Origin: Girardia tigrina
Taxonomy: Eukaryota
Assembly: GCA_001938485.1 (NCBI GenBank)
Contig: MQRK01233713.1
Span: forward strand, 1 to 51,893
DNA length: 51,893 bases
Direction of reading: 5' to 3'
The notes below the pieces were generated by a model, which was given only the letters and a program-made list of their open reading frames with translations, ran no database searches and had not been told where the DNA came from. Every line of letters starts with the position of its first letter. Position 1 is the stretch's first letter. The position numbers were made by a program, and so were the translations under genes. Below, piece by piece: positions 2,598 through 49,408 of the stretch.

Positions 2598-2720
2598 ATT
2601 ACAGAAAGCGAAATCGGTCATTATACGAAACAAGACAACGAGGAGGACCTTCAGGAGAAGACAAATGGGAAAGATCGAGATCAAATGAGTTCTGAATTTT
2701 CAGTTCATCAATCTGAAAGC
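2598..2720 (+). CDS. Host gene exon A (123 nt, phase 0-0): ITESEIGHYTKQDNEEDLQEKTNGKDRDQMSSEFSVHQSES
   Basis: tttag|ATT...AGC|gtaaat; open frame; 69-nt intron to the next exon; ends resemble the 129-nt repeat exon (IGH...FS[VI]HQS). Confidence 0.75.
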
Positions 2721-2789
2721 GTAAATATTTTTTAAAAATAAAACGTATTATATAAAATATAATTAAAATTTCGTTTTGTATTATATTAG

Positions 2790-2918
2790 GGTGCTGACAC
2801 CGGCTATGGTAACTCTAAAGGAAATAAAAGTGAAATGTATCTTTCTGGCGAAGTCAGCGGTAGAGTTCCTGGAGAAGGGAACGAAAGTCCCGATTTTTCA
2901 ATTCACCGAACAGATAAT
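2790..2918 (+). CDS. Host gene exon B1 (129 nt): GADTGYGNSKGNKSEMYLSGEVSGRVPGEGNESPDFSIHRTDN
   Basis: attag|GGT...AAT|gtaatc; open frame; paralogous to B2-B4. Confidence 0.8.
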
Positions 2919-3029
2919 GTAATCAATTATGTTTTATATTTTTTTGACTTATACATGGGGCTTAGAATAAATGTTTAAATTAATAGAAACATGAACAGGT
3001 TTCTATTAAGCTGTTGAGTATCGATCCAC

Positions 3030-3960
3030 AGATTTGGTAGATTTATCTTTTTTGTAAAATAACATTTAAACACGATAAAATAGTTTAACACCAAATGCAG
3101 TTAAGTACATAAAAAGTACTTACACACATACATCCTAGAATTTATTTGAAAAAAACTTATTTATCTTTATAAAATTAAGTGACGTTAAGTAGAGTACCAA
3201 AGTGAGGAGATAGAAGATAGGAGAAAGACAAATGAGCAATTAAATGCAGAAACGTTAATATTTCTGCTCTTCCATAAGATTCAATAGCACGCTACATTCG
3301 TTAATTAATTTAACGATACAGTTTTTTCATTGGATGTATAACACCTAGATTTGCCTGTAGAAATGCTGCTTTTTGTTTAGTCCTGTAGCCTTTCAGAGCG
3401 TCTTAAAGGTTCCATAGACTTGGATGATAGTAGTGAAATAGGGTCAGCTAACCGTAATGCCACTCTTCGACCGCATTATTCGTACGAGCTATACCATCAA
3501 AACCTGCCATATGCTTGTTCCAGATTTGAATGGGATAAAAATCTGGTCCATGAGCTCTACCTTGAAGCCTTCGTCCTCGAACATACGCATCTTCAACGAA
3601 TCTTAAAAGTTCATCCAACTGGTAGAAATCTGGTTTAACCTCTACAAATATATCAAATGCTTCTGGAACATTGTTAGGCTCGACGAAACCTAATGCAGCC
3701 ATTGAACGTATATAAATGTGTATTTCACAGTTATGCTCATATGTGATCTTAAGTCCTTTTTTTGTAACCAGTTGACACAAAAGAAAGTAACAGCCTTATC
3801 TTACACAAAAAAGAAATAAAATTATAAAAACAAAAAGGCAAATCTACCAAGGCTGATCATTTAAAATAAATTTTAATTTTTAAAATTTTAAAATGAACAA
3901 ACCCCAAACCTAAAGATTTTATTTTCCTAATTTATTTTTATATTGACATATTGTACCCTT
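3030..3960 (-). mobile_element. MULE (Mutator-like) transposase remnant, copy 1
   Basis: ORF 3448..3780 contains MAALGFVEP, FVEDAYVRGRR and IWNKH...RTNNAVEEWH, typical of MULE transposase C-terminal regions; near-duplicate at 9440-10400. Confidence 0.75.
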
Positions 3961-4128
3961 ATGTTACATGTGTTTTATATTAAACATTTTTTTTGTATTC
4001 AAATACCATATCGAGACTATCCAGGCAGTTCTTACAATTATGGTATTGTGTTTTTAAACATTCCTAAAAAAATTGTGTTATATAAAAATAATTCAACATA
4101 ATTCAAATTTCTTTATCTATTAAATTAG

Positions 4129-4257
4129 GATATCGATATCGGCCATGACAGCTCTCAAGGAAATAAAACAGACATGTATATTTCTGGCGAAGTCAGTGGT
4201 AGAGTTCCTGGAGAAGGTAACGAAAGTCCTGATTTTTCAATTCATTATTCAGATAAG
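4129..4257 (+). CDS. Host gene exon B2 (129 nt): DIDIGHDSSQGNKTDMYISGEVSGRVPGEGNESPDFSIHYSDK
   Basis: attag|GAT...AAG|gtaatt; open frame. Confidence 0.8.
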
Positions 4258-5334
4258 GTAATTAATTATTTTTCATTTTTTATGACTAATGCATGAGGTT
4301 TAGAATCATTTTCTGTATTCTATTGAAATATCTAGATTACTTAAGTAGTTCATTAACGTTTGAAATTTGGCTGTTAGTGGTTTCTTTGTATGGAACATAA
4401 ATGTTATTGCTTTTTAGACTGTTCTCAATTTGATTTTTTTCACGTAAATTTAGTGGTTGAAATGTTTGCAAAAGTAATAAATTGCTAATAGTTCGTTCTT
4501 TGTTATGTAATAACCTCTTTCGTGTGCTGACATTGTGTGGGATCTGTATGCAATGACCAGCTGCTTGTCTGATTCATCCATCTGCGATAGTACTGCCCCT
4601 ATACTGTCAAAACTAGCGTTTGTATCTAGAATAAACTGTTTTTTGAAATCTGGAAAACTCAATATTGGTGCCGTTATCAATGCTTTCTTCATGTCATGAA
4701 AAGCTATTTCACATGTATCTATCCAAATTATTTTTTATTAATTCGAGCCACACACTCCCTCCAATATTTTTTATCATATCCATTTATAAACCTTCTGTAG
4801 TAATTGCAAATTCCTAGAAAACGTCTTAAATTTTTGGTACATGTGAATCTTTGAAAATTCTCTATTGCTGCTATTTTCTCTGGATCTGTCTGAATTCCTT
4901 ATAATGCGTCCTAAAAATTTTACTTCTTTACATAGTATTTTGTATTTTGATGATTCGATTCTTAATCCTGCTTCTTTTATTCTTTTAAATACTTCTCTAA
5001 CAACGTTATAATGTTCTTCCTTTATGCTTGTTGATATTAATATGTCCAAATAGACTGATAATCCCTTCTTAATCGGTTTTAATACTTTGGTTATTAGTTC
5101 CTGAAATGTACCTAGTGCTGCTGCTATCCAAAATGCATTCGGTTACAGCACAATTGGCTTGATCTAGTGGAAACGGCCGTTCTTTCCTGTGATTCCTTGT
5201 CCGATTTTACTTGGTAGTAAGCGTTTCCTAAGTCTATGGTGCTGAAGTATTTTGTTCCGTGTAGCCTATCCATCATTTCTGCTATGATTGGCATAGGGAA
5301 TGCTTGTCTCTTTGTGATTTGGTTTAACTGTCTG

Positions 5335-7387: not shown

Positions 7388-7598
7388 CGTTTGTTCAAAT
7401 TTGTATAACATTCCTCAGCTCGATGTCTTGAATTTTTAAACCTTCCACATTTTACCTTGCTGTATTTGTGTCGCACATGACCTTCTTCTAAACATGCAAA
7501 GAAGGTCATGTACGACACAAATGCAGCAAGGTAAAATGTGGAAGGTTTAAAAATTCAAGACATCGAGCTGAGGAATGTTACACAAATTTGAACAAACG
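7388..7598. repeat. Fold-back inverted repeat, 100-bp arms, 11-nt loop
   Basis: 7388-7487 is the reverse complement of 7499-7598 with 3 mismatches counted by eye. Confidence 0.95.
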
Positions 7599-8094: not shown

Positions 8095-8223
8095 GATATC
8101 GATATCGGCCATGACAACTCGCAAGGAAATAAAAGTGACATGTATATTTCTGGCGAAGTCAGCGGTAGAGTTCCTGGAGAAAGGAACGAAAGTCCTAATT
8201 TCTCAATTCATCAATCAGATAAG
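8095..8223 (+). CDS. Host gene exon B3 (129 nt): DIDIGHDNSQGNKSDMYISGEVSGRVPGERNESPNFSIHQSDK
   Basis: attag|GAT...AAG|gtaatt; open frame. Confidence 0.8.
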
Positions 8224-9337: not shown

Positions 9338-10400
9338 GTGTACATTTCGTTCATCTCTCCTTCGTTCATCCTTCCTTTGTTCATCCAAAACTCGTTCATC
9401 CAGCCTACATTCGCTCCACATTTATTTTAAAGGACCAGCTTTGGTAGATTTATTTTTTATGTTTTTACTAATTTCTTTTTCACTTTTTTTGTGTAAGATA
9501 ATATTTAAACACGACAAGATAGTTTAACGCAAAATGCAGTTAAGTACATAAAAATAGTTACACATATACATCCTAAACTTAATTGAAAAACTTATTTATC
9601 TTAATAAAAGAAAGTGAAGTTCAGTAGAGTACCAAAGTGAGGAGATTGAAGTTAGGAGAAAGACAAATGAACAATTAAATGAGAAACGTTAATATTTCTA
9701 CTCTTCCATGGGATTCAACAGCTACACTCGTTCATTAATCTATCGATGCAGTTTCTTCATTGGACGTAGAACACCTGGATTTGCCTGTAGAAATGCTGCT
9801 TTCTATTTAGTCCTGTAGCCTTTCAGAGCGTCTAAATGGTTCCATAGACTTAGAAGGTAGTAGTGAAAAATGGTCTGTAAATCGTAATGCCACTCTTCGA
9901 TTGCATCATTCGTACGAGCTGTACCATCAAAACCTGCCATATGCTTGTTCCAGATTTGAATGGGATAAAAATCTGGTCCATGAACTCTACCTTGAAGCCT
10001 TCTTCCTCGAACATATGCATCTTCAAAGAATGTTAAAAGTTCATCCAACTGTTAGCAATCTAGTTTAACCTCTGCAAATATATCAAATGCTTCTGGAACA
10101 TCATCAGGTGGGATGAAACTTAATGCAACCATTGAACGTATATAAATGTGTATTTCATAGTTATGCTTATATGTGATCTTCAGTTTTATTTCGTAAGAAA
10201 CGTTGACTCAAAAGAAAGTAACAGCCTTATTTTACACAAAAAAGAAAAAAATTAAAAAACCAAAAAGGTAAAGCTACCGAAGCTGCTTCTTTAAAATAAA
10301 TTAAAAATGAACGAACGCGGGATAAAGGAACCCAAAACCTAAACACTTTATTTATCTACTATATTTTTATGTAGACATATTGTATGTATATGTTATGTTA
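9338..10400 (-). mobile_element. MULE transposase remnant, copy 2, with tandem-repeat terminus
   Basis: ORF 9803..10048 contains FFEDAYVRGRR and RTNDAIEEWH; aligns by eye with 3030-3960; 9345-9420 is tandem cgttcatcc units. Confidence 0.75.
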
Positions 10401-10596
10401 CATTTATGTTACATAATATATATTATGTTACAATTATGTTACATTTATTTTACGTTAAACATTTATTTTTGCATTCAAATACCTAAGACCAAGGCAGTTC
10501 ATACAATTCTGGATTTGAGTTGTAAACATTCTTAAAAAATCGTGTTATATAAAAACATATTAAACATAATTCACATTTCTTTATTTATTAAATTAG

Positions 10597-10725
10597 GATA
10601 TCGATGTCGGCCATGGCAGCTCTCAAGGAAATAAAACAGACATGTATATTTCTGGCGAAGTCAGCGGTAGAGTTCCTGGAGAAAGGAAAGAAAGTCCTGA
10701 TTTTTCAATTCATCAATCAGATAAG
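10597..10725 (+). CDS. Host gene exon B4 (129 nt): DIDVGHGSSQGNKTDMYISGEVSGRVPGERKESPDFSIHQSDK
   Basis: attag|GAT...AAG|gtaatt; open frame. Confidence 0.8.
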
Positions 10726-12539
10726 GTAATTAATTATTTTTTATGACTTTTATATGAAGTTTAGTATAACTGTTTAAATTAAGAAAAAATCGAACAATTT
10801 TCTTATAATAAAACTAGAATTTCAAGTCGTACGTCTAAATATTTCTGGAAAATCGTTTTCAATACCAAATGTATCTCCTTAAAAGCATTAAGATAAAGGT
10901 TTTTGTCATTAAATTTTATATTTACTTAACTTATTACATTTCTTACTTTATAAATGGATATGTAGTATGCTGTTGTTACTAAAAAAGTTTGTATTCTAAT
11001 GTCATATAAAGACTACTCAGACAGAACAGTATTATTAAGAACATTAATATGATTTTCGACACTTATTATTATCCAAAGTTTAGTTTTCCTCAGGCAAATT
11101 AAATCAAAATTTACGTAACTTAGCATCATACATTTGATTATATTTTTATCCAACTATCTGAAAAACCTATAAAAATAGTTACAACAAATTTCATTTCTTA
11201 AAATTAAAATCAAAGTTATTTTAAAAACTAGTAAATCAAAAAATTAAATTTTTTATATCCATTTTTATGCATTCAGTACTTTACTTTGCCAACAAAGTAT
11301 TAATTAAAAAAATGATTTACAAAACACAAATATTCAAAAAAATTTATATATATAAAATCCCAGTTTCATCTGCGTAACTCTCAAAGTTTACTGTGATAAA
11401 ATTTTTTCCTTGCTTTTGCATGGATTAATTTTTTAATTATTTAATCAATGCATAATAACTCCGGTTAATATGAAATTACGAGCCACAAATAAGCAGCGTC
11501 TGCGGAACTGCAATATATATTAATAATATGATGGAACGATTGCAGACTTTTAAAATAGTATCTAACACATGCATATAACATATATAATAGTTTAGAATGA
11601 AAAAATATCCGAAAGAACTTTTGGTTTACCTTAATGATTTAAATGAATTATTCAAAAATGTGAGTGAAACTCAATTTCAAATGTTTTAGATATTTTAGAA
11701 TTTAAATATAAATATTTAAATATAAATAAATGAATCGATAAACGTGTGCAACATAATGTGCTCAATCGATTGAAACATTTGGGCACTTTGCAACGATCGA
11801 TTAGCGCTTTTTGCACTTTGCCATGGTGACAACACCCATTGCCATGGTTACCATTGCAAAGTTCCAATCGATAATACACATGTGCAATATCAATTAGCAT
11901 ATGTTCTGACCTCCGTGGGAGGTGTGGGGAGAAGATACATTTACCCCCTATTACGTTTGTGAAATCTCTGATCTCCATACTTCATTCTAAATTTTAAAGC
12001 ATCTCTGATTATTTGGAATTGTCTTTGCCTGACTTATAATAGTATTGTCTCGAAAAGAATATACAGACTTTGAACTTGGTTCTACAATCTTGGTTCTCTT
12101 GCATTACTGACTCACTTGCTATGTGCAATTGATTGAAAACAGTTCCATGAACTCCCCTTAATGAACTCCCGCTTAATTTTAAGTGTGTATGTGTGTTGTT
12201 GTTTTGCTCAATTATTTGCATAATTTGTCATTATTTGAGTGTCATTACTGGAAAAGATTTGGTTATTTATTGCTAAATATGGCTTATAATTGGAAATTTT
12301 TTTTGAAGGGGGGAAACGTTAAATTTTGGGGGGAATGTCCCCCCCCATACAGGGCTGGAAGAAATACTGCTTTGAACAAAGCTGATTCAACTGATTTTTC
12401 TCTATCTACATGGATTTCTTTCAGTGGTCCAAATGTCCATACTCATCTTTATAATAACAATCTTTGCACTGTTTTTTTATCTTAAATAGCAGCAGCATTC
12501 GGGCTAAACTTTCTACTGAACTGGTCTATTATAGCAGTA

Positions 12540-14027: not shown

Positions 14028-14147
14028 CTTAGGGAAACTGACTCTAAAATGAGACAGAACGAAAAACCTTCGCATCAAAATGTCTATGGTGAAAGGATTA
14101 ATGAACTAGAGGAAAACACCGATATATCAGGTCCAATGTCCACCAAC
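14028..14147 (+). CDS. Host gene exon C (120 nt): LRETDSKMRQNEKPSHQNVYGERINELEENTDISGPMSTN
   Basis: ttcag|CTT...AAC|gtaatg; open frame; GC-richer island in AT-rich flanks. Confidence 0.7.
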
Positions 14148-17354: not shown

Positions 17355-17435
17355 AAAATGATGCTTCTTCAGGATGACTTGGACATGGACGAATCTTCTG
17401 TAACCAATACATATTCCGAGAGTCTATTGGAAAAT
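17355..17435 (+). CDS. Host gene exon D (81 nt): KMMLLQDDLDMDESSVTNTYSESLLEN
   Basis: tttctttcag|AAA...AAT|gtaatc; open frame. Confidence 0.7.
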
Positions 17436-17709
17436 GTAATCCTCATATTAATTTTTTTAATTAAAATATGAATACCTGAAACTATAAATAATGTATAAAA
17501 AATAATGGCTTTTTATTTTATTTGATCTCATTAATGTTTTTAACTAAAAATTTATTTCTAAAGTATTTTTTGGTGAATTGTAAAAGTTCAAACCAATAAA
17601 ATATTATTTTATACAATTATTAAATAAATTAATTAAAACTCTATAAACTTCAAACAAGATGAAAATTTCTTCTTAAAAACAAAATTCATCTATTAAAAGT
17701 ATAATTATA

Positions 17710-17750
17710 GACAATATATATTTCGACAAATCAACTGTTATCATCAGGTC
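17710..17750 (-). ncRNA. Minimal type I hammerhead ribozyme motif in Penelope pLTR
   Basis: Minus strand gac-CTGATGA-taacagttgatttgtc-GAAA-tatatatt-gtc: intact core, imperfect stem II, palindromic stem III, gac/gtc stem I. Confidence 0.6.
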
Positions 17751-17781
17751 ACTGATTAATAATTTAATTCACCTATATATA

Positions 17782-19038
17782 CATGGCTTCCTGTTTAATT
17801 TGAAAAATATCTCAATGATTTTGCAATAAAATAAAAAATTAAAAAAATAATAATTAAATTTATTTTATGATCAATATATTGTTTTTCATTGAAAAATTTA
17901 TATGTAATTTTCAATTTTCAATTGTAAAATTCAAAACAACTTAAAATGATAAGTGGATTAAGCAATGATGTTAGAGCTAGAATAATCAGATCTTATGAAA
18001 ATGGCAAGAGCTCTCCAGAAATTGCTGAAATGTTTGAATATCATAGAACAACCATCAACCGAGTTATAAAGGCATTTACAAAAGAAGGAAGATATTAGTC
18101 TAAAAAAGCGTGGCAGATATAAACCAAATGCATTCTCTGAGGTGCATTTAAATTCCATAATAGATTTCATTGCTAAAGATTGTTCCATAACACTCAATTC
18201 GATCAAAGAAAAAATTTGCATATTTATCAAGTGGATGTAAACAGATCGAAAAAAATTATGAAATCACCATTGAAATTAGATTTCAATACGTAAGGGAGCT
18301 TTTAAATATCACTTCATAAAAGGATGACAAAATTTATTTTTATAAAGTGGTTTCTTGTGTGAGTATGAGTAACAAAAAAGGACGAGCTCCTGTGGGACAT
18401 CGTGTCAAATTTTGTTCCGAATTTGAGAATCAAGAATGTTTCCGTTTGCTCAGTCATGTCGAAATCGGGCACGTTTTTTTATAAGAAAGAGTCTCGAGCA
18501 TTTAATATGGAAAGGTTTTGTTCGTTTATAGATGAATTGTTAGTTAGATTTGCCGAAAATGGAATAAGAGGCGCAGTATATGTCATGGATAATGTTTCTT
18601 TTCATCATAGTCCCATTGTTCAAGACAAAGTAACATTATCTGGACATGTGATTAAGTTTTTGCTACTATATTCGCCATTTTTAAATCCAATTGAGCATCT
18701 TTTTTCTCAGTGGAAGCAAATGGTTAAAAGTTCAAGACCAGTAAATGAAGAAGAATTAACCACTTTTATTAATTCTGCATTTTTAAGAATTTCAAGAGAA
18801 AACTGTACAGCATATTACAGGAAGATGTTAGGTTTGTTAATTCGATGTTTTAAAAAAGAAGAAATTGTTGATGAATAAAAATTTTTATTGCAAAAAAACA
18901 TTGTTAAAAATTAATAATTCGACATTTATAATCATTTGTAGAGAAAAAATAATTTTAGTTTTAAAATTTCCTGTGTAAAATTTTTATAATTTTTTATTTT
19001 TTTGCAAAATCATTTTGCAAATTAAACGGAAAACCCTC
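17782..19038 (+). mobile_element. IS630/Tc1-like (DDE_3) DNA transposon, disrupted
   Basis: TA-flanked imperfect TIRs catggcttcctgtttaatttg / caaattaaacggaaaaccctc. ORF 18402..18878 has VMDNVSFH and LLYSPFLNPIEHLFSQWK. Excision rejoins the Penelope pLTR. Confidence 0.9.
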
Positions 19039-19494
19039 TAAATACAAAAATAGTGATTATGTAATTGATTGCGTGAAATCATGATCTCATAAAATTAGTA
19101 ATAATTTTATTTCAATAAGCTGGTTGAGATTACCAATCGAACATTGATTTTAGGACAACGCGACCTTATTAACAATGCTTCACACGACACTCTCTCCCAA
19201 TAACTATCAGTGTGTTTACACAGAAATTGGAAATGGAAATTATCAATATTAATATCATATTTCCTTTTTTATGTTCTGCTATATTGCTCTTACTCTCTTT
19301 TCGATCATGTTCTTGAATTTGTTTACAGAGATGACTAGCAGTCTCTCCAATGAACAATATCAGAACAAAGTGTTAAAGATGTAATATAATTATTATTGAA
19401 CATATTATGAATTTTATGAGATCGTGATTTCATATTATCTTTTACATAAGCATTATTTTTGCATTTATATACAAGTGAATTAAATTATTAATCA

Positions 19495-21120: not shown

Positions 21121-21240
21121 ATAGTTTATCAACATATAAATGTTCAAAATTCTGAAACAGATTTCACTCGCAAACCCAGTCCTCCAAAACCGAATCCGAT
21201 AACTTTAACAAAAAGATTAAGTAATAGTCGAATGCAAAGA
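21121..21240 (+). CDS. Host gene exon E (120 nt): IVYQHINVQNSETDFTRKPSPPKPNPITLTKRLSNSRMQR
   Basis: atttag|ATA...AGA|gtaagt (consensus donor); open frame. Confidence 0.7.
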
Positions 21241-26019: not shown

Positions 26020-26094
26020 AGATTAAGTGTGAAAAAGAGCGACGCGGATATATCCGTATCAGATCAAATTGGAGAAAATGTGCAAACTCAAAAT
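26020..26094 (+). CDS. Host gene exon F (75 nt): RLSVKKSDADISVSDQIGENVQTQN
   Basis: ttctttcag|AGA...AAT|gtaagt; open frame. Confidence 0.72.
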
Positions 26095-29337: not shown

Positions 29338-29445
29338 CAAATCAAAAGACCGCCGAGTTCAGTTGATATGAAACAATTTATAAGAAACAAAGACTTAATC
29401 AATTATGAAAAATTTAATCCCGAAAAAAGGCAGTCTCTCCACAGA
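29338..29445 (+). CDS. Host gene exon G (108 nt): QIKRPPSSVDMKQFIRNKDLINYEKFNPEKRQSLHR
   Basis: cttctag|CAA...AGA|gtaaga; open frame. Confidence 0.7.
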
Positions 29446-30062: not shown

Positions 30063-30180
30063 NNNNNNNNNNNNNNNNNNNNNNNNNNNNNNNNNNNNNN
30101 NNNNNNNNNNNNNNNNNNNNNNNNNNNNNNNNNNNNNNNNNNNNNNNNNNNNNNNNNNNNNNNNNNNNNNNNNNNNNNNN
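30063..30180. other. Assembly gap
   Basis: Run of N. Confidence 1.
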
Positions 30181-31818
30181 ATTTTGGGCGAAATAATTGA
30201 ATTAATTTGTTTAAGTATGTGAATTGTTGATATTAATAAATTTTTGTGGTGTTAAATTATGACTTCAGAATGTGATAATAATGAAAGTGGCATAAACGCT
30301 ACTTACAATGTTTATTCTATCTTTTAATAATTTAAAAGGAAACGGAGATATATGATAAAGATAACAATTGACAGCAACCAAACATACTGTCAAAATTTAT
30401 TTTGCTTTGAACTGAACAAATGCGCTACTATATACAATGTCACCAGCCTCAAACTTAGTACATTGGTGATAACACTATATTCTCTCAGATTGTCTTCTTT
30501 CAGAATTTTCAGTAGAACTACATTGGTGAGATTTTGGATTGATTTGAATGTTATGTGAAAGCTAAATTTGAGTTGAATATATTGAGTGTGAAAAGTTTTA
30601 TCTCAAAGATTAACTTTTGGTTTACTTGGAATGGTTATCTTTATCATGTCTCCGTTACCCTTTAAACTCTAAACTGACGGCAATCGATACTGGCCAATGG
30701 TTGGTTGTGAGAATAAATTAATCGCTTTTAAAATGTTAGTTGCGTTGATATCATTTTCGAATTAAGATTCATAATTATCAAAAAGTTTTATTAGCACCAA
30801 ATACGAAATTCTAGTTTAAACAAATTCAAACAAATTTTTATCTTTGTTATAGTTCGAACGATTAGAATCACCTCATCTGGAATCACTTGGATCAGACTCT
30901 GTAAAATGTCATCAAATTCATCGACTTGAGTTTCTCGTAACAAGGTCAACACTTGTAACGCGAGCGGATGAAGATAATTACCAATAAAATTTTTAACATG
31001 TTTTTATTGTTGCAAGATGAGCTCGGACACAGTCATCATGAAATTGATCGCCGTTTTCAGTACGTCATTCCGTTTTGAACTGATCTCATTCAACGAATTC
31101 CCCGTGAAATAAGTCGGTGTCGAATCGGATAAGATATCAAACAACAATAGACAAAGCTCCACCGGGGTCTCCTACCACAACTGCACATTGTGTTCCGCAT
31201 GACTCAGCATTTTGTTCAATAAAATTAATTCAGCCAAAATTTGAACATTGAGACACTCAAATTGGATTTGAGATTAATTTTATCAGAAACACATCCTGAT
31301 CGGGAATTAGTTCTTTTTCTCATAAATCACAACCAAATCGATCACTTTGTTCGAATGGAGTCGCGCCCATTTTATTTTTGATCTCCTTGATCCATCGAAC
31401 AATGGAAATTAATCGCGTATTTTATGTATTTTATTCGATAAAACCGATTATTCCGAATATCAATAATCAAATTCGATTCTCTATTATTATTATCGACAAA
31501 ATTAATGTGAGATCCGACGGTATTCTATTTTATAATGACTGGATTTAATGTCATTATGAAAGATAATGCCGATCGATTTTTTGGTATCTGTGAATTCATG
31601 AAGGAAAATATTCATATTAACGAAGATAAAAACACAATATTCAAATTTTTATTGATTTAACATTTTATTCACCACTCATAATTAACTCGATTTACACCCA
31701 TATAATTAAAACAAACAAAATTTCTTTTCTGGATTTTTCCAGTTAACATTTTTTACAAGAAAACCAAATTTTATAAAAGTTTTTTTACAATATATATATA
31801 TAATTATATATATATATA

Positions 31819-31883
31819 NNNNNNNNNNNNNNNNNNNNNNNNNNNNNNNNNNNNNNNNNNNNNNNNNNNNNNNNNNNNNNNNN
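31819..31883. other. Assembly gap within (TA)n
   Basis: Run of N flanked by TA repeats. Confidence 1.
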
Positions 31884-31957
31884 TATATATATATATATAT
31901 ATATATGTTTAAATTTCATTTTAATTAATTTCATTTTTTAATATAAAAAATGGTATA

Positions 31958-33270: not shown

Positions 33271-33608
33271 TATTTATTTATATATGTAATAATATATTTC
33301 AGTACTCCATTGTCAGAAACCATCAACCTTGGCTTCCATCTTCTTTCTATCGTTCACGGATATAATCGTAAGGAGACGTATGTTTCAAACTATATGCCTG
33401 TTCCTAATAAGCTGTTGGAGTTTGTAAACAACTCATTATGCACAAAAGTCGTTTTTCTCTCAACTTTCCTCTTCGACTTTGATCAATATTGATCCGGCGT
33501 AATCAACTTCCATATTTACTAATGGTAACTTGAAAACTCTAAAACTTGGTCGGGGCGCTATGATTTGACTTCTAGATCTTGCTGCTTTCCTTCGGTAAAA
33601 CATACATT

Positions 33609-36600: not shown

Positions 36601-37704
36601 GGCGTTTGGCGATCGGCAGCAGATACATCGGTTTTTGACTTTTGAGACCATTTTAGTAACCAGAAGAGTTACCAGTTTAATTTGCTCTAAAGACGCCGTT
36701 TTAATCAACAGTTGACAATTTATTTTGGTGAGTATAGGGGATCCTGATTTAGTGATAAGTATGTGAAGTCTCTTAGAGACTGAGGAATCGCGCAGCTGCT
36801 GCAGGTATCGGAACACGTGAGCGGGATCATCCGGACGCTCGTCAATCGATCGGTCATATCCAGAATGGAGGCCAGAGCTATAGCTGTCGCATAAAAGCTT
36901 ACTGGATCGAGATGTCTCTTGACGAAAACGTAACGGGCGGCCATCCTGCCCGAAAATCCCTGAAGTGACTTTTAGTCCAATAAAGTTTAATGACATATCA
37001 ATTTCGAAAGTATAGATGCAAATAAATCGATGAGAAGTTTTATTTTTAACACAGAGAATCGGATCGACAATTCATAATCATTGCAACACCACGCTTTTAG
37101 TCTAACATCAATTTCTAATTAATAAACAAAACTTCTTTTTTTAACAAAGTTATTTCTTTTTAATTCTTTTCGATTTTAATTAATTATTGTTAAATTTTTG
37201 GCAATTAATGAATTTTATCACAGTTTCTTTTTTTTAATTCGTAAATTATAATTCATATTAACATTTGTAATTCAAAATCGAAATTAAATTTATGATTATC
37301 CTCAGTATTTTTAAATTTCAGTTGCTGATTCTATTTTTGCTTTACTAAATTAGTTATTTCTAATAGTAGAATCGATTTTGAATTAAGTTTTTGTAATTGC
37401 AGTTCACTGCTGCATCAATTTGATGTTTACTACTTAAGTGGCGATGAAGTGTTGTAGTATTTCCTTGCGACACAGGAAATGTTTTTCCACATTTATTGCA
37501 CTTATATATCTTTTCTTTATTTATTTTTATATTTTCTTGTTATTCACTATTTTGAAAAACATTAATAAAAATTTAAAATTTAAAAAAAAATGCTGTTGAA
37601 AATTTTTTAGTAAGAAAGTGTTTAAAAGCATAAGCTCGAAGCCCGTCGGGTTTCAGGCTCGGTCTTCGGGCTTTGGCCTTGAAGCCCACTCATTCCAAAC
37701 ACTA
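33609..37704 (-). mobile_element. hAT transposon with both ends and 8-bp TSD
   Basis: TIR tagtgtttggaa / ttccaaacacta; TSD catacatt at 33601-33608 and 37705-37712; subterminal (tc)gggct repeats. BED finger KCNKCGKTF...LHRHLSSKH (~37420-37503), FSITLDEW, STDDGASVM and PTSIDAERSFS. Confidence 0.95.
35521..37263 (-). mobile_element. 5' portion (LTR, PBS, gag) of a Gypsy-type element nested in the hAT
   Basis: ORF 35511..36188 is gag-like (PQCWLDLLELRL...ITSQ..., YLELKRHLL). Minus-strand TGGTGACC at ~36596 resembles a tRNA-Trp PBS. Putative LTR starts TGTTAAT at 37263. hAT coding sequence resumes on both sides. Confidence 0.75.
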
Positions 37705-38353
37705 CATACATTCATTTATATACTTTTTTACGATACCCAGAATTCCTTTTATCCCAAATCAATAATTGTTCTCATTAAGCTAATGCTTCACTCCACCAAA
37801 ATGATTATTTCTCTTGTTCTCCTATTAAAAGCCGCATTTTCAAACTGTTCTTATATAAAATTATTAGATAATGCGTTTTGCAATCCTATAACTCAACGTT
37901 CACTAACCGACAATTAGCTTAAATCTGCTCGCATTCATTGATTCTTATATTCATTTCAATCAACTTATTTCCTCTAGAGACCTTTCCGTCTAGGTTAAGT
38001 ACATCTATCTCCTATTTTAAAATAATTTCTTTTGGTCCACTCGGAAAATCTCTATTCCTTGCTCATTAATTTAGTCATCAAAACTTGGTCTTCTCTTCTG
38101 TTCATTCTCCAGAATATCAAACAATGAACTCTTTCTATCTAAAACTTGAAAAAAGGAAAACTTAGTAAAAAAGATAGGCTGGTTACGATGATCATTTTAA
38201 ATATATAGTAAAATGTAATCTTTTTTATCTTTTCTAGATTTTTATACAATATATTTGAAAAACAAAGGTTAATAAAGTTTTGAAATTAAATATAAATCTT
38301 TCTTATAATAATCATTGATACCTTATTTAGATTAATGTATAACATGGTTTCAG

Positions 38354-38452
38354 AAATCTGTTAGGCAAATGCATACTGAAGAGAGTAATGATAGTAAAAG
38401 ATTCGTCGACAATGAAGACGAAACTTTACAAATGAAGGATAAACAATCAGAT
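38354..38452 (+). CDS. Host gene exon H (99 nt): KSVRQMHTEESNDSKRFVDNEDETLQMKDKQSD
   Basis: tttcag|AAA...GAT|gttagt; open frame. Confidence 0.7.
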
Positions 38453-39741: not shown

Positions 39742-39861
39742 GAAGAATCTTTGAAAAGGGACAACGATGTTAACAGTGGTTTATCGATGGGATATAAAAA
39801 CATCAGCATTTCAATATCCCAAGTTCAACAAATTCCGCGTCATTATTCCGAAATTTCTAAT
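39742..39861 (+). CDS. Host gene exon I (120 nt): EESLKRDNDVNSGLSMGYKNISISISQVQQIPRHYSEISN
   Basis: tttttatttag|GAA...AAT|gtaagt; open frame. Confidence 0.75.
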
Positions 39862-40499: not shown

Positions 40500-41258
40500 T
40501 GCGGAAAATATTTTCACAGAATTAGTTAAATCTCCAGGTTTCACTTCAGGATTCATAATATCAACAAGTAGAATTTATTAATTATTTACAATATTTTTAG
40601 AATACTTAAACAAATAATAATCACAACTTTCCCCCTCTTTAATAATTCGTTATTTACTTTCTTAATCCACTCAATTCTTCGACGAATTATGTTTCTATCT
40701 TTCAAATTCTGTAGTTCCAATGGGTGTGGCGATATATGTCTTAAAATTTGGTACGGTCCATCGAATGGGAAAGTGTCCTTTCTCAGTTTTGTAGGATCTT
40801 GTTTTACAAAGACTTTCTAGCCATTCTCGAAATGTCGATTTGTTCTCTTCTCTCTCTCCCAATTTTCCATTCGTCTTGTCGCTTTCTCTAAATTTTCGCT
40901 TACCTTCATCTTGATCACGTTGCTCTCTTCCGTTTTAGCTATTCCTGCTGCCGCATGTAAGTTTATTTTTCTACCAAACACAACTTCGAAGGGCGAATAT
41001 CCGGTCGTACTCTGAACTGTTGCATTTAGACAGAATTCTATCTTCGGAACAATTTGGCACCATGATCGTTTGTCTGTGTCTCCTCTGCTTATTATTATCA
41101 TGTCTGTCACTGTTCGAATAGTTCTTTCTGCCAACCCGTTTGATTGATGTTGAAATGGGCTAATAAATCTTTGTTCGATTCCATATTTCCTGCAAAAATC
41201 TTTAAATTTTCCGCCAGTAAAACATTTTCCATTGTCTGTTAATATTGTTTTTGACTTC

Positions 41259-41304
<46 letters not shown>

Positions 41305-44140
41305 ATTTTATCAACACGCATTGAACTATGGTGTCTCCCTTTTTGAGTTCTAATCTCTGTCAAAGAGACCAATTTCGAAAACTGGTCCACCATGGCCAAT
41401 AGATATGAGTACATGCTATTCTTGTCACCCATATATGCGATATCCATCACGACTTGCTCTAAAAATTCGTCACTTCTTATTTGAATCAACTTCTCTTTTG
41501 TTTTTTCACTTGGAATTTTTCTGCGTATACATTCCTGACATTCTCCAATAACGATTTGCACCTCTTTCACTAAATCTGGTAGCATAAAATGATTTTGGAT
41601 ATACTTCTTTGTCTTTTTGATACCTACATGGCATAAATCTCTGTGTATTTTCCTGATGAAATCTCTTCTAATTTGCTTCGGAACCAATGGTAACACACAA
41701 TTTCCTTCTTGCCTACCCCATAACTCATTTTGATAAACTAATTGGTCATTTAGTTGTAATAACTCCTTGGTGATTTCATTCTTTTCACCCTCTGCTCTCT
41801 CTTGTATTTGTTTCAACTGATTCAACTCTGAGCAATTTTCTTGTTCATCTTTTATCCATTGAATTGTAGATTGAATCACCACTGTATTGATGTGTTTCAC
41901 CCTTGCTTTTGTTGATTTTGGTTCTTCGTGTTTTGTTTCGTCGTCGTATAGCCCCGATAATCCATCTGCATTTCCATGTTCGTCACCTTTTCTATACTTC
42001 AAATCAAAGTCAAAATCAGCCATGTTTGCTAACCATGTCTGGAATTGAGGAGTTATTGGTTTGGAAGTACTCTTCATATACATTATGATCAGTTCTTGCT
42101 GTAAATCGCTTGCCATATAAATATTATTTGACATGTAACATAAACTCTTGCAAAGCTAATAGTTCCTTTCTTGTCACACAGTACCCTTTTTCGTGTGTGG
42201 TTAAAGTCCTCGATGCATATGTGATTACTACTTCTTTCTCTTCTGATATCTGACTAAGAACTGCTCCTATCGATCCGAATGATGCATCTGTGTCTAAGCT
42301 GAAATTATTATTCGGCTTCATAAATGCTAATATTGGTGTTCCACATAGTTTTTGCTTCTATTCGTTAAAACTTCTGTCCCACTCGTCTGACCAAAATATT
42401 TCTTTACATTTTCTACTGCATGCACTGTGCAAAGGTGCTGCTAATTATACATAATTCTTGATAAATCGTAGTAGTTATATAGACCTAAAAATGCTCGTAA
42501 ATTTCGAGTACACTTTGGAATCGGAAAATTTTGAATTTCTGCCACTTTCAATTTATTTGTTGAGATACCTTCTTTGTTAATTGTATGTCCCAGAAATACC
42601 AGCTCCCCCACTCCGAATTTGCATTTCACTGGATTGACTTTTAAACCTGCTTTCTTCAGTCTATTCAGTACTTCTTCTAATAGTCTTATATGATCCTTCA
42701 TTGATTTTGAGTAAATTAAGACATCATCTATATATATTACTACTCCAGAGAATATTAAATCTTCAAATAATGAATTCATTATTCTCTGAAATGTTCCGGG
42801 TGCTGTTGAAAGTCCAAACGGTACACGGTTAAAACAATACTGCTTTGTTCTTGTGCAAAACGCAGTCTTTTCTTGAGAACGTTCATCCAATGCTACTTGA
42901 TGGTGTGCTTTGCCTAAATCTATACTGGAAAAAATTCTGGAGTCACCCAGAGCATCCACAGAGCAAGGAAACTTTATTTGATACATCATTCATTTTTCTG
43001 AAATCTAAGCAAATTCGAATACCTCTATCTTTCTTTGGTGTACTAACTTTTACATTCCATTCACTTTTACATTTCAGAATTATTCCTACCTTTCTAATCC
43101 TTTCAGAAATCCTTCGATTTGACTTTCTAAATGAATCGATTACCTTCTTGGATTCAGAAAAATCGGTTTACCTTCTGTTTCAATTTTATGGACAACAATA
43201 TCCGTAAATCCCAGATCGTATTCATGTTTCATGAAAACATCATCATATCGTTTCACAATGTCTTCCAGTCGTCTGTTTTGCTCTTGCAGTTTCCTGTCTT
43301 TCTCCACTGTCATAACTGACTTCTTGGTAGTTTTTTCAAGTTTGATTCCGAATTTATGCATGACATTAACACTTCCAATGACTGCCGGTCGGAATGCTTT
43401 CACCACTGAAAAATCTACCGCATGGCACTCTTCTTTCCATTTCAACTTCACTGTCATTTTTCCCAAACACTTATGGCCTTCTGAAAACGCTTCATTTAGT
43501 ATAATTGGGCTCTTTTCTAATCTAGGTTGTCCGATTTCCAAACAAACCTTCTCACTAATAACTGAAACACCCGCTCCACTATCCCACAACATTAATACAT
43601 TGTGATTGTTCGGCTTAACATCGCTCCATCATCTACCATCTGACCCCTCTACTATCTCTGTAATTCGATTATTTGGATATTTTATGCCGACTCCACAGAC
43701 GAAATGCTCACCATGGAGTCTCTGGCGTTTAAATCATCTTCATATTCATCTTTATATGATACGATATCCACGTTGTTTTCATTGTACACATCTTTGATGC
43801 ATTCTACATTAATATTCTTAATATGATTACAGTTTCTGAAACCATGTCCACTTTTCCACAGATTAAACAACGATTATTTAAAGGATAATCTTTCCTCAAA
43901 TGCCCATGTTTTCCACAGCAATAACAATCCTCTCTGGTTAAATGCACCTCTTCTGGAGTTGGAAGTCTCTTTATTTTGCAATATAACTTCCTTGCTTGGT
44001 ACCAAGCCGAATGCACCAGGCGATTATATTGTTGTTTATCTTCTAACATTTTACTGGATCCTTTCTCATTACTTTTATTAAATCTTTCCGATGGTATTCT
44101 ACGTTCCGTTCTTAATATTGGTTGTTTATCGTTTGATTCA
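40500..44140 (-). mobile_element. 5'-truncated Ty3/Gypsy element (gag knuckles, PR, RT, RH, IN, PPT, start of 3' LTR)
   Basis: CYCCGKHGH; LWDSGAGVSVIS; IDLGKAHHQ...PFGL...YIDD; LDTDASFGSIGAVLSQ; IHRDLCHVG...CQEC; TDNG...QSNGLAER; GPYQI. PPT aaagagggggaaagt is followed by TGTGA at 40625. Left LTR boundary not determined. Confidence 0.93.
41261..41301. repeat. (TA)n expansion inside the integrase
   Basis: Visible TA run giving the IYIYIY tract. Confidence 0.9.
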
Positions 44141-44620
44141 TTCAAGATAGGAAGTTTGTTTCGTATGTATTTAATCCATCACTCCAAGTGGTTTATTTTC
44201 CAATTTTCTTTATCAATATTAATGTAATGGGTGTGACGCCATATACATCGGAGAGACTTGTCGTCATCTATTTAAAAGAATTCAGGCACATAATCACAGG
44301 GAAAGTGATAGCAATATTATTCATCATAAGAAGAAATGTTTGAATAGTAAAGTCGATGTAAGTAATTTTAAGATTTATTGTTCACAATTTGGTAATTACT
44401 GGGAGAGGGTGATGTGTGAAGCATTGTTGATCAAATCCCTTGATCCTAAAATCAATGTGCAAACACCATCCTCTTCAACTTTATTGAAAGTATTTTCATG
44501 ATTTATAAATTACTTTATTATTACATAGACATTGCTTTGATATATAAACTCGAATTTATCATTGTTAATTTAGTCTGATGATGACGGTTGATCCATCGAA
44601 ATTGATCACAATATATTTTG
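44141..44620 (+). mobile_element. Penelope-like element 3' fragment (GIY-YIG plus pLTR)
   Basis: From ~44223: CNGCDAIYIGETCRHLFKRIQAH...SNFKIL...ERVMCEALLIKSLDPKINVQ...LKVFS*; homologous to the 19.1-19.4 kb copy. Confidence 0.88.
44570..44612 (+). ncRNA. Hammerhead ribozyme motif in Penelope pLTR
   Basis: tagt-CTGATGA-tgacggttgatccatc-GAAA-ttgatc-acaa, about 75 nt after the GIY-YIG stop. Confidence 0.6.
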
Positions 44621-45041: not shown

Positions 45042-45158
45042 GATCGATCCGTGAGAAACGCCTACTCAGAAATACAACCAGTGACGACGTCTGCAAGAAA
45101 TATCAATATTTCAATATCTCAAGGCCAACCCTTTGACAATGTTTCACAAGATATGAAG
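45042..45158 (+). CDS. Host gene exon J (117 nt): DRSVRNAYSEIQPVTTSARNINISISQGQPFDNVSQDMK
   Basis: ttgttcag|GAT...AAG|gtaaac; open frame; shares NI.ISISQ with exon I. Confidence 0.75.
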
Positions 45159-45565: not shown

Positions 45566-47110
45566 AATATGTATAAAATATGGACAACTTGCATGATTTG
45601 TATAAAATAAAAATTTCTATATAATTTCAACCCAGTTTAATAATAATTTAACAATAAAAACTTGAAATCTCTAAATAATGGCGATTTATTTCAATATGAA
45701 AACAGTTTGTATTAGTACAAAAGTAATATGACAGCTTATATATTTTTTTATAAACATAAATTAGGGCGGTGTAACACCTCCTTTGGCTTCAATAATAGCT
45801 TTTGTACGTTTCTCCATAGTAGCTAAAAGATTAAAACAAGTTTCACAACTTATGCGGGTCCAAATGCTAAATAATCTTTCAATCAACTCGTCCTTAGTTT
45901 TTGGTTTATATACTTTTAATTTTGACTTCATAAAAGCTCCAAATTTTTAATAGGGTGTAAATCTTGACTTGATTAAGGTCAATTTATTACAGAGATTTCA
46001 TTATTTTTGAACCCACACTTGCTTGAGTTTCCATTGTGACAACTGGCTCTATCTAGTTGAAAAATATAATTTTTAATTGTGGCTTGATTGCATAATCAGT
46101 AACAGATTTAGACTCGAAATTTCTTGAAAATGAGCAGACTTTACTATATCATCAATGATATGTACATTTTTCACACTTTGGGCGGTCATGGAATCAAAAA
46201 CCATCACAGATTCTGAAAATTTAATCTTTCACTCCAGGCTGTTTGAATTGAATAATTCTTTAGAATTCCGCCGTATGTGAGTACTGCAATCGGATAGGCT
46301 GATTTTGAATCTGGATTAATCACTAAATATAACCTTCAGTCATTATATCGAAAAACATTTTTTATGTTTTTGCCAATTTTAATTTCAATATCTTTTGTTT
46401 TTTTTTGCTAAAAATGGTTTAAAAATAATGGATTAAAATAAATGATAATTAAAATATAAACCAACCTTATAATATTTATAACAGAATTTTGTTGATTCCT
46501 CTTTTACATGTACTATTAGACACGTTCTTCTTTATTCCTGAAGTCCAAATAATTTTAATTTCTTTTAACGATTTAAACCTGTTCTACTTGATTATTTTGA
46601 CAAACTACCTGTCATCTCTTGAGTCTAATATTTGGTCTTCCCGTTTTCCCGGTTTTTTAGTCTTTTTGATTTAATTATTCTTATGTTATCATAAACTGTA
46701 GATTTGGGAAATCGAAGCATATGAGCAATTTTTCTTATGGAAAAGTTTTTTCATGTAGATTTGAAATTGCTTCCTTTGTAGTGTGTAATAATTCGCTTCT
46801 AGCGATTTTACTATTCCGAAGTACTATAAACCATGGTAATTGTCATATTTAAACAGAATTTATTATTACTTTTCGTTAATTTAAATAAATTTCTTGATGA
46901 TTTTCGAAGATTTATTAACATTTTGAAAGGTTTTATTTAATCTGTCCTGTCACTTTTAAACCAAATCAAATTGTTTTCAGATTGAAATAAATTTTTATTT
47001 AGAGATTTCAAGTTTTTATTGTTAAATTATTATTAAACTGGGTTGAAATTATAAAGAAATTTTTATTTTGTACAAATCATGTAATTGGTTCATATTTCAC
47101 ATACATTTAT
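45566..47110 (-). mobile_element. Decayed Tc1 element with long (~145 bp) TIRs
   Basis: 45566-45710 is the reverse complement of ~46967-47110. Minus strand FSIRKIAHMLRFPKSTVYD, YIFQLDRASCH, SQDLHPI and TKAIIEAKGGVT. Confidence 0.88.
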
Positions 47111-47505
47111 TTAACAAGGCGAGTAAAAATATCTGGTGTCCGGTGACGTTTGGCGTAGTATTAAATATTTACAATATAAACTCAATGTAAATATATTTAA
47201 TAATTTTAATACAAGAATAACTCAGTAATCACCACTTCAAAACAAAAGATAAATTCCAAAAAAAAAACAAAAGATTCGAAAATAATCCTTATAAACCCAA
47301 AGGATTTTTTACTTTTTAAAATATTATATTTACGATATAAATCATATATATTTGTCAATAATATCACACGTTATCTCTCCTTAATCTTTTAAAAATTTTT
47401 AAAATACTTTTAAAATAAAATTCGAACAGTTAACGAAATATTTTCGCTATTAGTGGACTAATTACCCCTTGAAAATTCTAAGAGGGATGACATAGATCGT
47501 ACTTA

Positions 47506-47807
47506 TATAGCATTTTTTACAATGAAATTAAACTTTCGCAAAAGGAAATTGAACTTTTACAAAATGAAATTGAACTTCTGTATTTAGTGTCCTCGGGATT
47601 ACGTGTCCGGGATTAACTGTACTGAGATTAACTGTCTCTAGATTAAGTGTCCCCGTACCAACCCATCGTAGAGCGTCTTTTGATTTTTTATTTATTCGAT
47701 CATTCTCTCTAAAAAAACTTTGAACTTTTTTCAATAGTTCAATTTCAAATTACCAAAAGTTCAATTCCATTTTGCGAAAGTTTCCATTTTATTGTAAAAA
47801 TGCTATA
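47506..47807. mobile_element. MITE-like element with ~70-bp imperfect TIRs containing a tandem-repeat block
   Basis: tatagcattttttacaatgaaattaaactttcgcaaaa...aaattgaact vs agttcaattt...ttttgcgaaagttt...attgtaaaaatgctata; internal gatta(a/c)ctgt-like repeats at 47585-47660. Confidence 0.65.
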
Positions 47808-49339
47808 AATTCTAAAAGATGTTTTACTACTTCGTGATAAATAAGAAACTATATATCCTTTAGGCTTTTAAATGATTTAAATTTAAACCATTTTGTGTTA
47901 AGGAATAATTTTTTTGAGTCTTTAGTTGAAATTATTTCTTCGTTCATCGTAACGCTTTTTTGTGTGAAGTCTGAAAAATTGTATATACAAGATTTTAATG
48001 CGTTTTTATTTTTATTTATTGAATATAAATTTAAGACACATCAAAAGACCTTTTGAATGATACGAGATTATAAATTCTCTTTAAAAACAGATTTACAAGT
48101 ATCTTAATTAGCTTATTGAAAATAGAGCTGTTGTCCAAAAAAGAACAATAATCTAAACAAATCCAAAAATTAAAGAACAATAAAATCTATTTTAATTCTT
48201 TTTAACGACCAAAACAATCAATATTCAAAGTAATGACCATTGGATGACCAATTGATCGATTCCATCTATTACCAAGTTGTTCAATCCCGCTTCGGTATCA
48301 TTTTTTTGGGGTTTAGAGGCGAAAAATCCCTTCTCAGGATTTAACCTCACCAAGATTGTTGAGGTGGCATCCACGAAGAAAGTGAGTCATGGAACGGAAA
48401 AGGTTACAAAAATCAAGCATTTATAATCAAGGTGTGGAAAAATTATAAAGACATCAACATTCTGTTATTATTTCTTGGGTTTTCCTGGTTTTGAGTCGTT
48501 TTGTGCTGTCTTGCTGCAGAAGAGCTCGTAATCCATTGATAAAAGTGGGTTATTTTACGGTAATCGATGTATACATCCAATCAAGTTTTTGTAAAATAGA
48601 AGTTTACATCAACTGTTTGACAATTTTGAAGTAGCTTGAAGGTTGTGAGAAGTGGTTGCAACATCAATATCAGAATTCATTTAACACCAAAATTTATTTA
48701 TATAACAACAATTCACATATTTTAACAAATTTTTCTGTTAATTTAATTATCACGCCACAAATTAATCTATTAAATTCTTTTCGATTCAATTTTTAAAATC
48801 TTGCAAATTTATTAAATACATTTCACATTAAAACTAAAAATTTATTTTAAAATTTATTTAAAATTGTTTCATAACTTATATTAAAATATATAAATTGTTA
48901 TGACTGTAAAAATATTTTTATTTATAAATAAATATTTAATATTTAATGGTTTTCTTATCATTTTTAATTTTAAAATATTGAATAAGCATATTAACATTAA
49001 AATATTTTACCTTAAATTAAAAAATAATAAATTATTCTGCCGAGATGAAAATTTAAATTAACCCCTCATAAAGGTAATTATTCCTTCTAAATTTCTCTTA
49101 ACGTACAAAAGTATCTTAGTGTCCAAGAACTGATTCTGTTTGTCTGGATTGTTAAAATAAATCCATTTTGTCACAAATAACAATTATGCTGATAAAACGG
49201 TCATTAGATATATTTTACAGCCATTTTCAGCCATGGAACCTAAATTTCACTCAGTTTATGATAATTCTTTCATTTTATTATGTATATTTTAAAATATTTC
49301 TATACACCGAACAAATTAATAAAGAATATTTTTATTAAG

Positions 49340-49408
49340 ATGTCATTTAATAGAAATACTTATGATGGTATAGAAAATGTTTCTGAAGCCGAAAATTATT
49401 CATCCAAA
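49340..49408 (+). CDS. Candidate host gene exon K (69 nt): MSFNRNTYDGIENVSEAENYSSK
   Basis: ttttattaag|ATG...AAA|gttaga; open frame; same composition as the other exons but weaker splice sites. Confidence 0.5.

What the first reader, a model, noticed from the sequence alone, without database searches (positions are those of the whole stretch)
2598..49408. Hidden >46-kb gene built entirely of short symmetric phase-0 exons, missed by the ORF track
Seen: 13-14 slightly GC-richer islands, each bounded by an AT/pyrimidine tract plus AG and a GT(A/T)A donor. Lengths are 123, 129x4, 120, 81, 120, 75, 108, 99, 120, 117 and (69) nt. Every one is divisible by 3, stop-free in frame 0, on the + strand and located between rather than inside TEs. 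Spliced, they give 493-516 aa with no Cys or Trp, rich in S/E/D/N/K/Q, with no domain I recognise. Inference: an intrinsically disordered region assembled from freely skippable cassettes, allowing combinatorial isoforms or length tuning, comparable in logic to titin PEVK exons or schistosome micro-exon genes but with larger exons. Caveat: exons were picked by eye, so the phase uniformity is partly subject to selection bias.
Basis: partly seen in the sequence, partly recalled or inferred. Interest (0 to 1): 0.85.

Follow-up and report, generated by a model that had tools for sequence, protein, structure and literature searches.

The report
Disordered-repeat gene from duplicated in-frame exons
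This is the middle of a real, spliced gene over 125 kb long, probably from a flatworm, that grew a long floppy protein region by repeatedly copying short in-frame exons; this is a known way such genes evolve, and free mix-and-match splicing was not shown.

Summary
All 14 exons are present on the + strand, each a multiple of 3 and open in frame 0 (516 aa, no Cys or Trp). RNA contigs from four runs of one sample join upstream exon→E1→E2→E3→E4→E5→E6; E1-E2 and E2-E3 fall exactly on GT..AG. The gene is larger than reported: at least 1.58 kb of mRNA lies upstream. A second contig (C218292) probably follows through a split mariner and carries about 14 more phase-0 exons of related repeat families (about 28 exons, about 960 aa, at least 125 kb). 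The exons are tandem duplicates: a 43-aa repeat (pN/pS 0.4-1.1), eight copies of a strand-like I-x-V-S-x-S-Q motif, and acidic spacers. Duplication alone explains the phase uniformity. Combinatorial splicing is not shown: E1-E6 form one linear chain, and the only hint is a contig fork just after E7 in one run. No homologue or domain was found, and both gene ends are unlocated. Best reading: a lineage-specific, disordered, multivalent scaffold region built by symmetric-exon duplication, a known architecture. It is not a schistosome-type micro-exon gene. The scan had noted the four-exon array here, and similar phase-0 cassette genes on other DNA of this genome.

The parts
1..441 (+). 3' end of a young high-copy DNA transposon (hAT-like by its terminal repeat and apparent 8-bp target duplication; my reading); the assembly breaks here, upstream exons lie on an unidentified contig
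   Evidence: 40 other copies at 92-99% identity among 223 candidates
2598..2720 (+). E1, 123 nt, phase 0, diverged A-type repeat
   Evidence: RNA 0 differences; joined upstream to an unlocated exon and downstream to E2 in 4/4 runs; related to E3-E5, z 5.4-7.4
2790..2918 (+). E2, 129 nt, A-type 43-aa repeat
   Evidence: RNA joints 2720/2790 and 2918/4129, GT..AG
3048..4306 (+). Duplication unit: E3 with its upstream intron, 83% identical to 9487-10767 (E5 unit)
   Evidence: blastn; exon 121/129 identical vs intron 929/1060, Fisher P=0.04
4129..4257 (+). E3, 129 nt, A-type repeat
   Evidence: RNA 0 differences; E3-E4 join decoded from mismatch counts
8095..8223 (+). E4, 129 nt, A-type repeat
   Evidence: E3-E4 and E4-E5 joins decoded from contigs laid on E2/E3
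10597..10725 (+). E5, 129 nt, A-type repeat
   Evidence: contigs with E5's 6 differences continue into the first 30 nt of E6 in 3 runs
14028..14147 (+). E6, 120 nt, phase 0
   Evidence: acceptor confirmed by RNA loose end; donor predicted
17355..17435 (+). E7, 81 nt, acidic spacer
   Evidence: predicted; contig of run X4 ends 202 nt after E5 = E6+E7 (201)+1
21121..21240 (+). E8, 120 nt, basic and proline-rich; candidate skipped exon
   Evidence: predicted; skip inferred only from the fork after E7
26020..26094 (+). E9, 75 nt, phase 0
   Evidence: predicted, strong splice sites
29338..29445 (+). E10, 108 nt, basic
   Evidence: predicted
30063..31883 (.). Two assembly gaps (30063-30180, 31819-31883) inside intron 10; not filled; no exon touches them
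   Evidence: continuity E10-E11 not read directly
38354..38452 (+). E11, 99 nt, GTTAG donor
   Evidence: predicted
39742..39861 (+). E12, 120 nt, B-type repeat (I-x-I-S-I-S-Q motif)
   Evidence: predicted; one of eight B exons on two contigs
45042..45158 (+). E13, 117 nt, B-type repeat
   Evidence: predicted; z about 7 to B exons c1, c9, c10 of C218292
49340..49408 (+). E14, 69 nt, acidic spacer, GTTAG donor; weakest exon call
   Evidence: predicted; z 3.7 to c14
51705..51893 (+). 5' end of a ~1.19-kb mariner; contig C218292 starts with the 3' end of the same family in the same orientation, so the gene probably continues there

Best explanation
The window is the middle of one large, single-copy, lineage-specific protein-coding gene, probably planarian. 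SHOWN: the 5' exons are transcribed and spliced in order at the predicted sites; the A-type exons are tandem duplicates that include their introns and mostly show purifying selection. STRONGLY INFERRED: the gene continues on contig C218292, giving about 28 phase-0 exons, about 960 aa and at least 125 kb, with at least 1.58 kb more mRNA upstream. INFERRED mechanism of origin: an ancestral phase-0 symmetric exon in a disordered region was copied repeatedly by unequal crossing-over in transposon-rich introns; each copy keeps the frame, so uniform phase is a by-product and needs no selection for skipping. INFERRED function (about 50%): a long disordered intracellular scaffold or tether carrying several copies of short binding motifs (five A repeats; eight B repeats with the alternating pattern R-x-I-x-V-S-x-[ST]-Q, suited to adding a beta-strand to a partner), separated by serine-rich acidic or basic spacers. 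Most exons are included constitutively; a few, such as E8, may be skipped at times.
For: RNA joints and 0-difference exon matches (decoded in 25, 27). A repeats occur only here in the genome. Exon-plus-intron duplication; pN/pS 0.42-0.81 in five of six pairs and 1.09 in one, no indels or stops. Second contig found by profile, with six B exons and about eight spacer exons, all + strand. Mariner halves match in family and orientation; two intact copies show both ends 1,193 and 1,196 bp apart. Phase-blind test. Disorder: FoldIndex -0.17, no Cys/Trp in 963 aa, most hydrophobic 19-mer 0.63. Runs of symmetric exons are enriched for disorder and for internal tandem duplication in human genes (PMC3632108).
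Against: Neither end of the gene was found, so a signal peptide, membrane anchor or folded domain could change the functional reading. N-x-S/T sequons are mildly enriched (23 vs 15.1 shuffled, P=0.02). Junctions E6 to E14 and all of C218292 are predictions; two exons there (c6, c11) needed a weaker donor to be in phase. The contig link is indirect. No binding partner was tested. pN/pS rests on 8-24 differences per pair.
Confidence: 0.6

Rival explanations
1. Same gene structure, but the region is the glycosylated stalk or body of a secreted or membrane-anchored protein (mucus, adhesive or surface coat), with the signal peptide in the unlocated 5' part.
For: Sequons 23 vs 15.1 expected, P=0.02, many within A and B repeats. 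Secreted disordered SCPP/SIBLING proteins grew by class 0,0 modules (PMC3632108). An unchecked scan note describes a symmetric-exon SEA-mucin in this genome (s1-691890).
Against: Thr and Pro are only 4-5% each, unlike mucin PTS regions; no Cys. Eight of the 23 sequons come from the four recent A duplicates, so they are not independent. No hydrophobic segment in 963 aa.
Confidence: 0.25
2. One reading: a combinatorial cassette system in which exons are freely skipped to tune length or generate many isoforms, as in titin PEVK or schistosome micro-exon genes.
For: Any subset keeps the frame. The X4 contig ends 1 nt after E7, as expected for a fork E7-E8 versus E7-E9 or E7-E11, which share only their first base. 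Planarian regulated exons often keep the frame and lie in disordered regions (PMC4978528).
Against: One linear path from the upstream exon to E6 in all four runs; no E1-E3 skip; contigs of 1,776 nt run unbranched beyond E5 in two runs. One contig in X3 looks like E3-E5 by mismatch count, but it would share 31-mers with the E4-E5 contig of the same run, so E3-E4 is the likelier reading. A SNP at base 2 of E8 would give the same fork.
Confidence: 0.15
3. The region is the fast-evolving disordered part of a conserved, known gene (cytoskeletal, centrosomal or signalling scaffold) whose folded domains lie in the unlocated ends; C218292 may instead be a neighbouring paralogue. This overlaps with the best explanation on structure and differs on identity.
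For: At least 1.58 kb of upstream mRNA could hold a domain of several hundred residues; large transposon-filled introns are typical of conserved genes in such genomes (general knowledge). Homology searches could only use 40-aa pieces.
Against: No hit for A or B repeats in any database tried; at least 960 aa lack any domain; the mariner link favours one locus.
Confidence: 0.3

Closest known systems
Disordered proteins assembled from runs of symmetric exons by internal tandem duplication (Schad, Kalmar, Tompa 2013, PMC3632108; examples calpastatin, MAP2, MBD1, SCPP/SIBLING family)
   Same: Consecutive same-phase symmetric exons, adjacent-exon similarity, predicted disorder, repeated short motifs separated by spacers.
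   Different: No sequence relationship; about 28 consecutive phase-0 exons with three repeat classes in one gene; calpastatin and MAP2 use class 1,1 exons.
Schistosome micro-exon genes (MEGs; PMC4350168; bioRxiv 10.1101/2023.06.21.545858)
   Same: Symmetric exons separated by kb-sized introns; probably the same phylum; no known domain.
   Different: MEG exons are 3-81 nt by the cited preprint's abstract; here 48-129 nt, most above 90. MEG products carry a signal peptide (not testable here) and are variably spliced (not seen here); mature MEGs have high dN/dS, here pN/pS is mostly below 1.
Titin PEVK region (from my own knowledge, not tested)
   Same: Many short in-frame exons encoding a disordered region.
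   Different: Composition is Ser/Asp/Glu/Asn-rich with 4% Pro and 5% Val, not PEVK; no flanking Ig domains found; differential splicing not shown.
Multivalent beta-strand-motif scaffolds such as LC8/DYNLL partners with TQT repeats, or filamin-binding strands (recalled lead)
   Same: Several copies of a short alternating hydrophobic/polar motif ending in [ST]-Q inside a disordered chain.
   Different: The residue after Q is G, S, R, V or P rather than the usual T of LC8 motifs; no binding test or sequence match.

Membership tests
Symmetric-exon disordered repeat gene (Schad et al. type) | Three or more successive symmetric exons of one phase | tested here: met
   14 in the window, six joins RNA-supported; phase-blind test
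Symmetric-exon disordered repeat gene (Schad et al. type) | Adjacent exons similar through tandem duplication | tested here: met
   E2-E5 differ by 8-24 of 129 nt, with intron homology; B family of eight
Symmetric-exon disordered repeat gene (Schad et al. type) | Encoded region mostly disordered | tested here: met
   FoldIndex negative for 26 of 28 exons, no Cys/Trp; prediction only
Micro-exon genes (MEG) | Most coding sequence in very small symmetric exons | tested here: not met
   Window exons 69-129 nt, 11 of 14 above 81 nt vs 3-81 nt
Micro-exon genes (MEG) | Extensive alternative splicing giving a pool of variants | tested here: inconclusive
   Linear path through E1-E6; one possible fork after E7; contigs drop rare variants; one sample
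Micro-exon genes (MEG) | N-terminal signal peptide | not testable with these tools
   5' exons not located
Titin PEVK | Pro/Glu/Val/Lys-dominated composition | tested here: not met
   P+E+V+K = 24% of residues
Mucin PTS stalk | Pro/Thr/Ser-dominated repeats | tested here: not met
   S 14%, T 4.3%, P 4.1%
LC8/DYNLL multivalent partner | Repeated TQT-type anchor | tested here: not met
   B motif has no T after Q in any of the eight copies; binding itself not testable

The most novel reading that the evidence does not exclude
A free-living flatworm has a giant modular protein whose valency is set by regulated exon choice: cell types include different numbers of A and B binding repeats and charged spacers, and the B motif is an undescribed beta-strand ligand for a hub protein. 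This would be a macro-exon, single-gene counterpart of schistosome micro-exon genes outside parasites.
Probability: 0.15. Interest if true: 0.7.

Novelty: new member of a known kind. Interest (0 to 1): 0.38.

Why it matters
It is a real gene that ORF-based annotation and homology search both miss, and it records growth by exon duplication at several ages in one locus: near-identical A copies with their introns, older B copies, and barely related spacers. That makes it a clean case for how long disordered regions expand. If exon choice proves regulated, it would offer a knock-down-friendly animal model for splicing-tuned multivalency and a non-parasitic comparison for micro-exon genes. As it stands the architecture is known and the function is unproven.

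Tried and rejected
Artefact or chance ORF islands: rejected by RNA joints and the strand-controlled scan. Transposon-derived pieces: exons are single-copy in the genome and lie between recognisable elements. Processed copy mimicking splicing: no intronless copy of the A exon was found in the assembly. Homology: Pfam gave only DegQ at E 0.09; the 1.84-billion-protein search gave two spurious repeat hits; word-index searches were blank but see only proteins of 0.55-1.75 times a 40-aa query; ESM Atlas blank; PDB only E 0.046 and E 1. AlphaFold on single repeats was uninformative, so no fold search was run. Searches for the upstream exon with E1, A-profile and DNA queries found nothing outside the window. 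An E3-E5 skip in run X3 was considered and not accepted. A six-exon block duplication (E10-c1 vs c7-c12) was tested and is not significant (P=0.07). Weak B-profile hits on five other contigs were inspected and dismissed. A literature search for the assembly accession I recalled found nothing. Left out on the operators' rules: any search with the joined spliced model, and any search with the 30-letter RNA loose end upstream of E1, which has no reference. The N gaps were not filled.
Full report
Observation. The window is a 51,893-nt, roughly 30% G+C sequence with gaps at 30063-30180 and 31819-31883. It is the whole of contig C233713 in a 1,428,149,015-base assembly of 255,254 contigs. No tool names the organism. 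Size, fragmentation and composition fit my recollection of the draft genome of the planarian Girardia tigrina, and an earlier scan note calls this genome a flatworm; treat the name as a guess. All are multiples of 3 and open in frame 0; E1, E6-E8 and E10-E14 are open only in frame 0. Together they encode 516 aa with no Cys or Trp. E11 and E14 have GTTAG donors; the rest have GTAA.

Chance and selection bias.

Transcription. Four runs (one sample, one study) hold 0.11 of the words of 2500-4400, near what exons alone would give. Laid on 2450-4500, their contigs match E1, E2 and E3 with no differences and join 2720/2790 and 2918/4129 at GT..AG in all four runs; intron cover is confined to low-depth, diverged matches in repeat-derived stretches. 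Because E2-E5 are near copies, contigs from E4 and E5 also fall on this stretch; their mismatch counts equal those computed for E4 and E5 and give E3-E4 (runs X1, X4), E4-E5 (X2, X3, X4) and E5-E6 (X1, X2, X4). The contig holding E1 carries 1,577-1,579 nt upstream in two runs, and its last codons resemble the end of the A repeat, so at least one more A-type exon lies upstream. The contig leaving E5 runs 1,709 nt further in two runs, while E6-E14 total only 909 nt. So the gene extends on both sides of the window.

The gaps. Both lie in intron 10 (29446-38353) and touch no exon. I did not fill them. The E10-E11 join was not read. Continuity is inferred from common strand, phase and composition, and from contig length: 1,709 nt equals E6-E14 plus the first eight exons of the next contig (1,680 nt) plus 29, near the 30-nt overlap expected at a graph merge. 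That arithmetic is weak support only.

Continuation. A two-sequence profile of E12 and E13 found a sibling exon on contig C218292. That 74,014-nt contig carries about 14 further + strand exons, c1-c14, of 48-123 nt and the same composition; twelve are phase 0 with good sites, two (c6, c11) need a weaker donor. The window ends in the 5' end of a mariner and C218292 begins with a mariner 3' end in the same orientation. The two ends belong to one family: contigs C241556 and C193516 hold both, 1,193 and 1,196 bp apart. The family has about 500 candidates and 6 of 40 listed 3' ends start a contig, so the link is not unique by itself; but C218292 was picked independently by exon similarity, and I estimate the chance of a fitting end at under 1 in 1,000. 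The gene is thus probably at least 125 kb with about 28 exons and 963 aa in this region. On the operators' rules I did not search with the joined spliced model, nor with the 30-letter RNA loose end, which has no reference.

Anatomy. Class A: E2-E5 (43 aa; 8-24 nt differences of 129) and the diverged E1. E3 and E5 were copied with 1.1 kb of upstream intron (83% identity). The exon is better kept than the intron (P=0.04); pN/pS is 0.42-0.81 in five pairs and 1.09 in one, with no indels. Class B: E12, E13, c1, c2, c3, c9, c10, c12, sharing R-x-I-x-V-S-[IVL]-[ST]-Q-x-x-P; the profile finds no credible copy on other contigs. Spacers: acidic (E7, E14, c6, c8, c11, c14; c6, c8 and c14 are detectably related) or basic (E8, E10). 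FoldIndex is negative for 26 of 28 exons and there is no hydrophobic segment. AlphaFold gives no fold for single repeats (pTM 0.16, 0.22). No family or homologue was found, but only 40-aa pieces could be searched.

Mechanism. Shown: splicing of the 5' part, duplication of exon-plus-intron units, coding constraint on A. Inferred: repeated unequal crossing-over copied phase-0 symmetric exons, which keep the frame, so uniform phase needs no selection for skipping. This is the pattern described for human disordered proteins, where successive symmetric exons are enriched for disorder and for mutual similarity (PMC3632108). For function I favour, at about even odds, an intracellular multivalent scaffold: conserved short motifs in a serine-rich charged chain, low Thr and Pro, no Cys. 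A glycosylated stalk is the main rival (sequons 23 vs 15.1, P=0.02, inflated by the A duplicates).

Combinatorial splicing. The data show one path from the upstream exon to E6 and no E1-E3 skip. One X3 contig has the mismatch count of E3-E5, but it would share 31-mers with the E4-E5 contig of the same run, which an assembly graph does not allow; E3-E4 is likelier. The X4 contig stops 202 nt after E5, that is E6+E7 plus one base, which fits a fork E7-E8 versus E7-E9 or E7-E11 but also a SNP. These contigs drop rare variants and come from one sample, so regulated skipping remains open; frame-keeping exons in disordered regions are typical regulated exons in planarians (PMC4978528).

Comparison and verdict. 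It works like other symmetric-exon disordered repeat genes and meets that description. It is not a micro-exon gene (exons too large; variable splicing unshown; signal peptide untestable; PMC4350168), not titin PEVK and not a PTS mucin by composition. The scan's notes list other phase-0 cassette genes in this genome (unchecked), which suggests the architecture is not rare here. Verdict: observation confirmed and extended, interpretation partly supported, new member of a known kind, interest 0.38.

Noticed in passing
G000:C218292 (L013-L020) 784-71122: About 14 further exons of the same gene or a close paralogue; the 32-kb stretch between c7 and c8 and four N gaps may hide more.
   Followed up: yes
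window 4257: Run X2 reads the last base of E3 as T (as in E2) instead of G; allele or gene conversion between repeats.
   Followed up: no
L017:8787-8824 (C218292:48787-48824): Strong acceptor and donor around a 38-nt segment that is not a multiple of 3; degenerate exon or noise.
   Followed up: partly
window 29338-49408 and C218292:784-900 vs C218292:17273-64329: Possible six-exon block duplication; the four GTT donors pair at the same offset, but the permutation test is not significant (P=0.07).
   Followed up: yes
window 21950-25800: Minus-strand non-LTR retrotransposon remains (endonuclease, reverse transcriptase, C-terminal C2H2 zinc finger), with a perfect 59-nt inverted repeat at 23586-23644 and 25739-25797.
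   Followed up: no
window 17677-19567: Tc1-like element (DDE_3, terminal repeats near 17776 and 19044) nested inside another inverted-repeat element; matching pieces lie after c14 on C218292 and after E7 here.
   Followed up: partly
window 28051-29277: Mariner with perfect 33-nt terminal inverted repeats ending 60 nt before E10; transposase frame broken.
   Followed up: no
window 7388-7598: Near-perfect 100-nt inverted repeat with an 11-nt spacer inside a degraded LTR-type element.
   Followed up: no
window 40600-44200: Degraded minus-strand gypsy-type element (integrase zinc-binding and core domains) with a TA microsatellite in its integrase region; observed only.
   Followed up: no
window 51705-51893 and L013:1-118: Very young mariner family, about 1.19 kb, about 500 candidate copies, the 40 best at 98-100% identity; a frequent cause of contig breaks and usable to order contigs.
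   Followed up: partly
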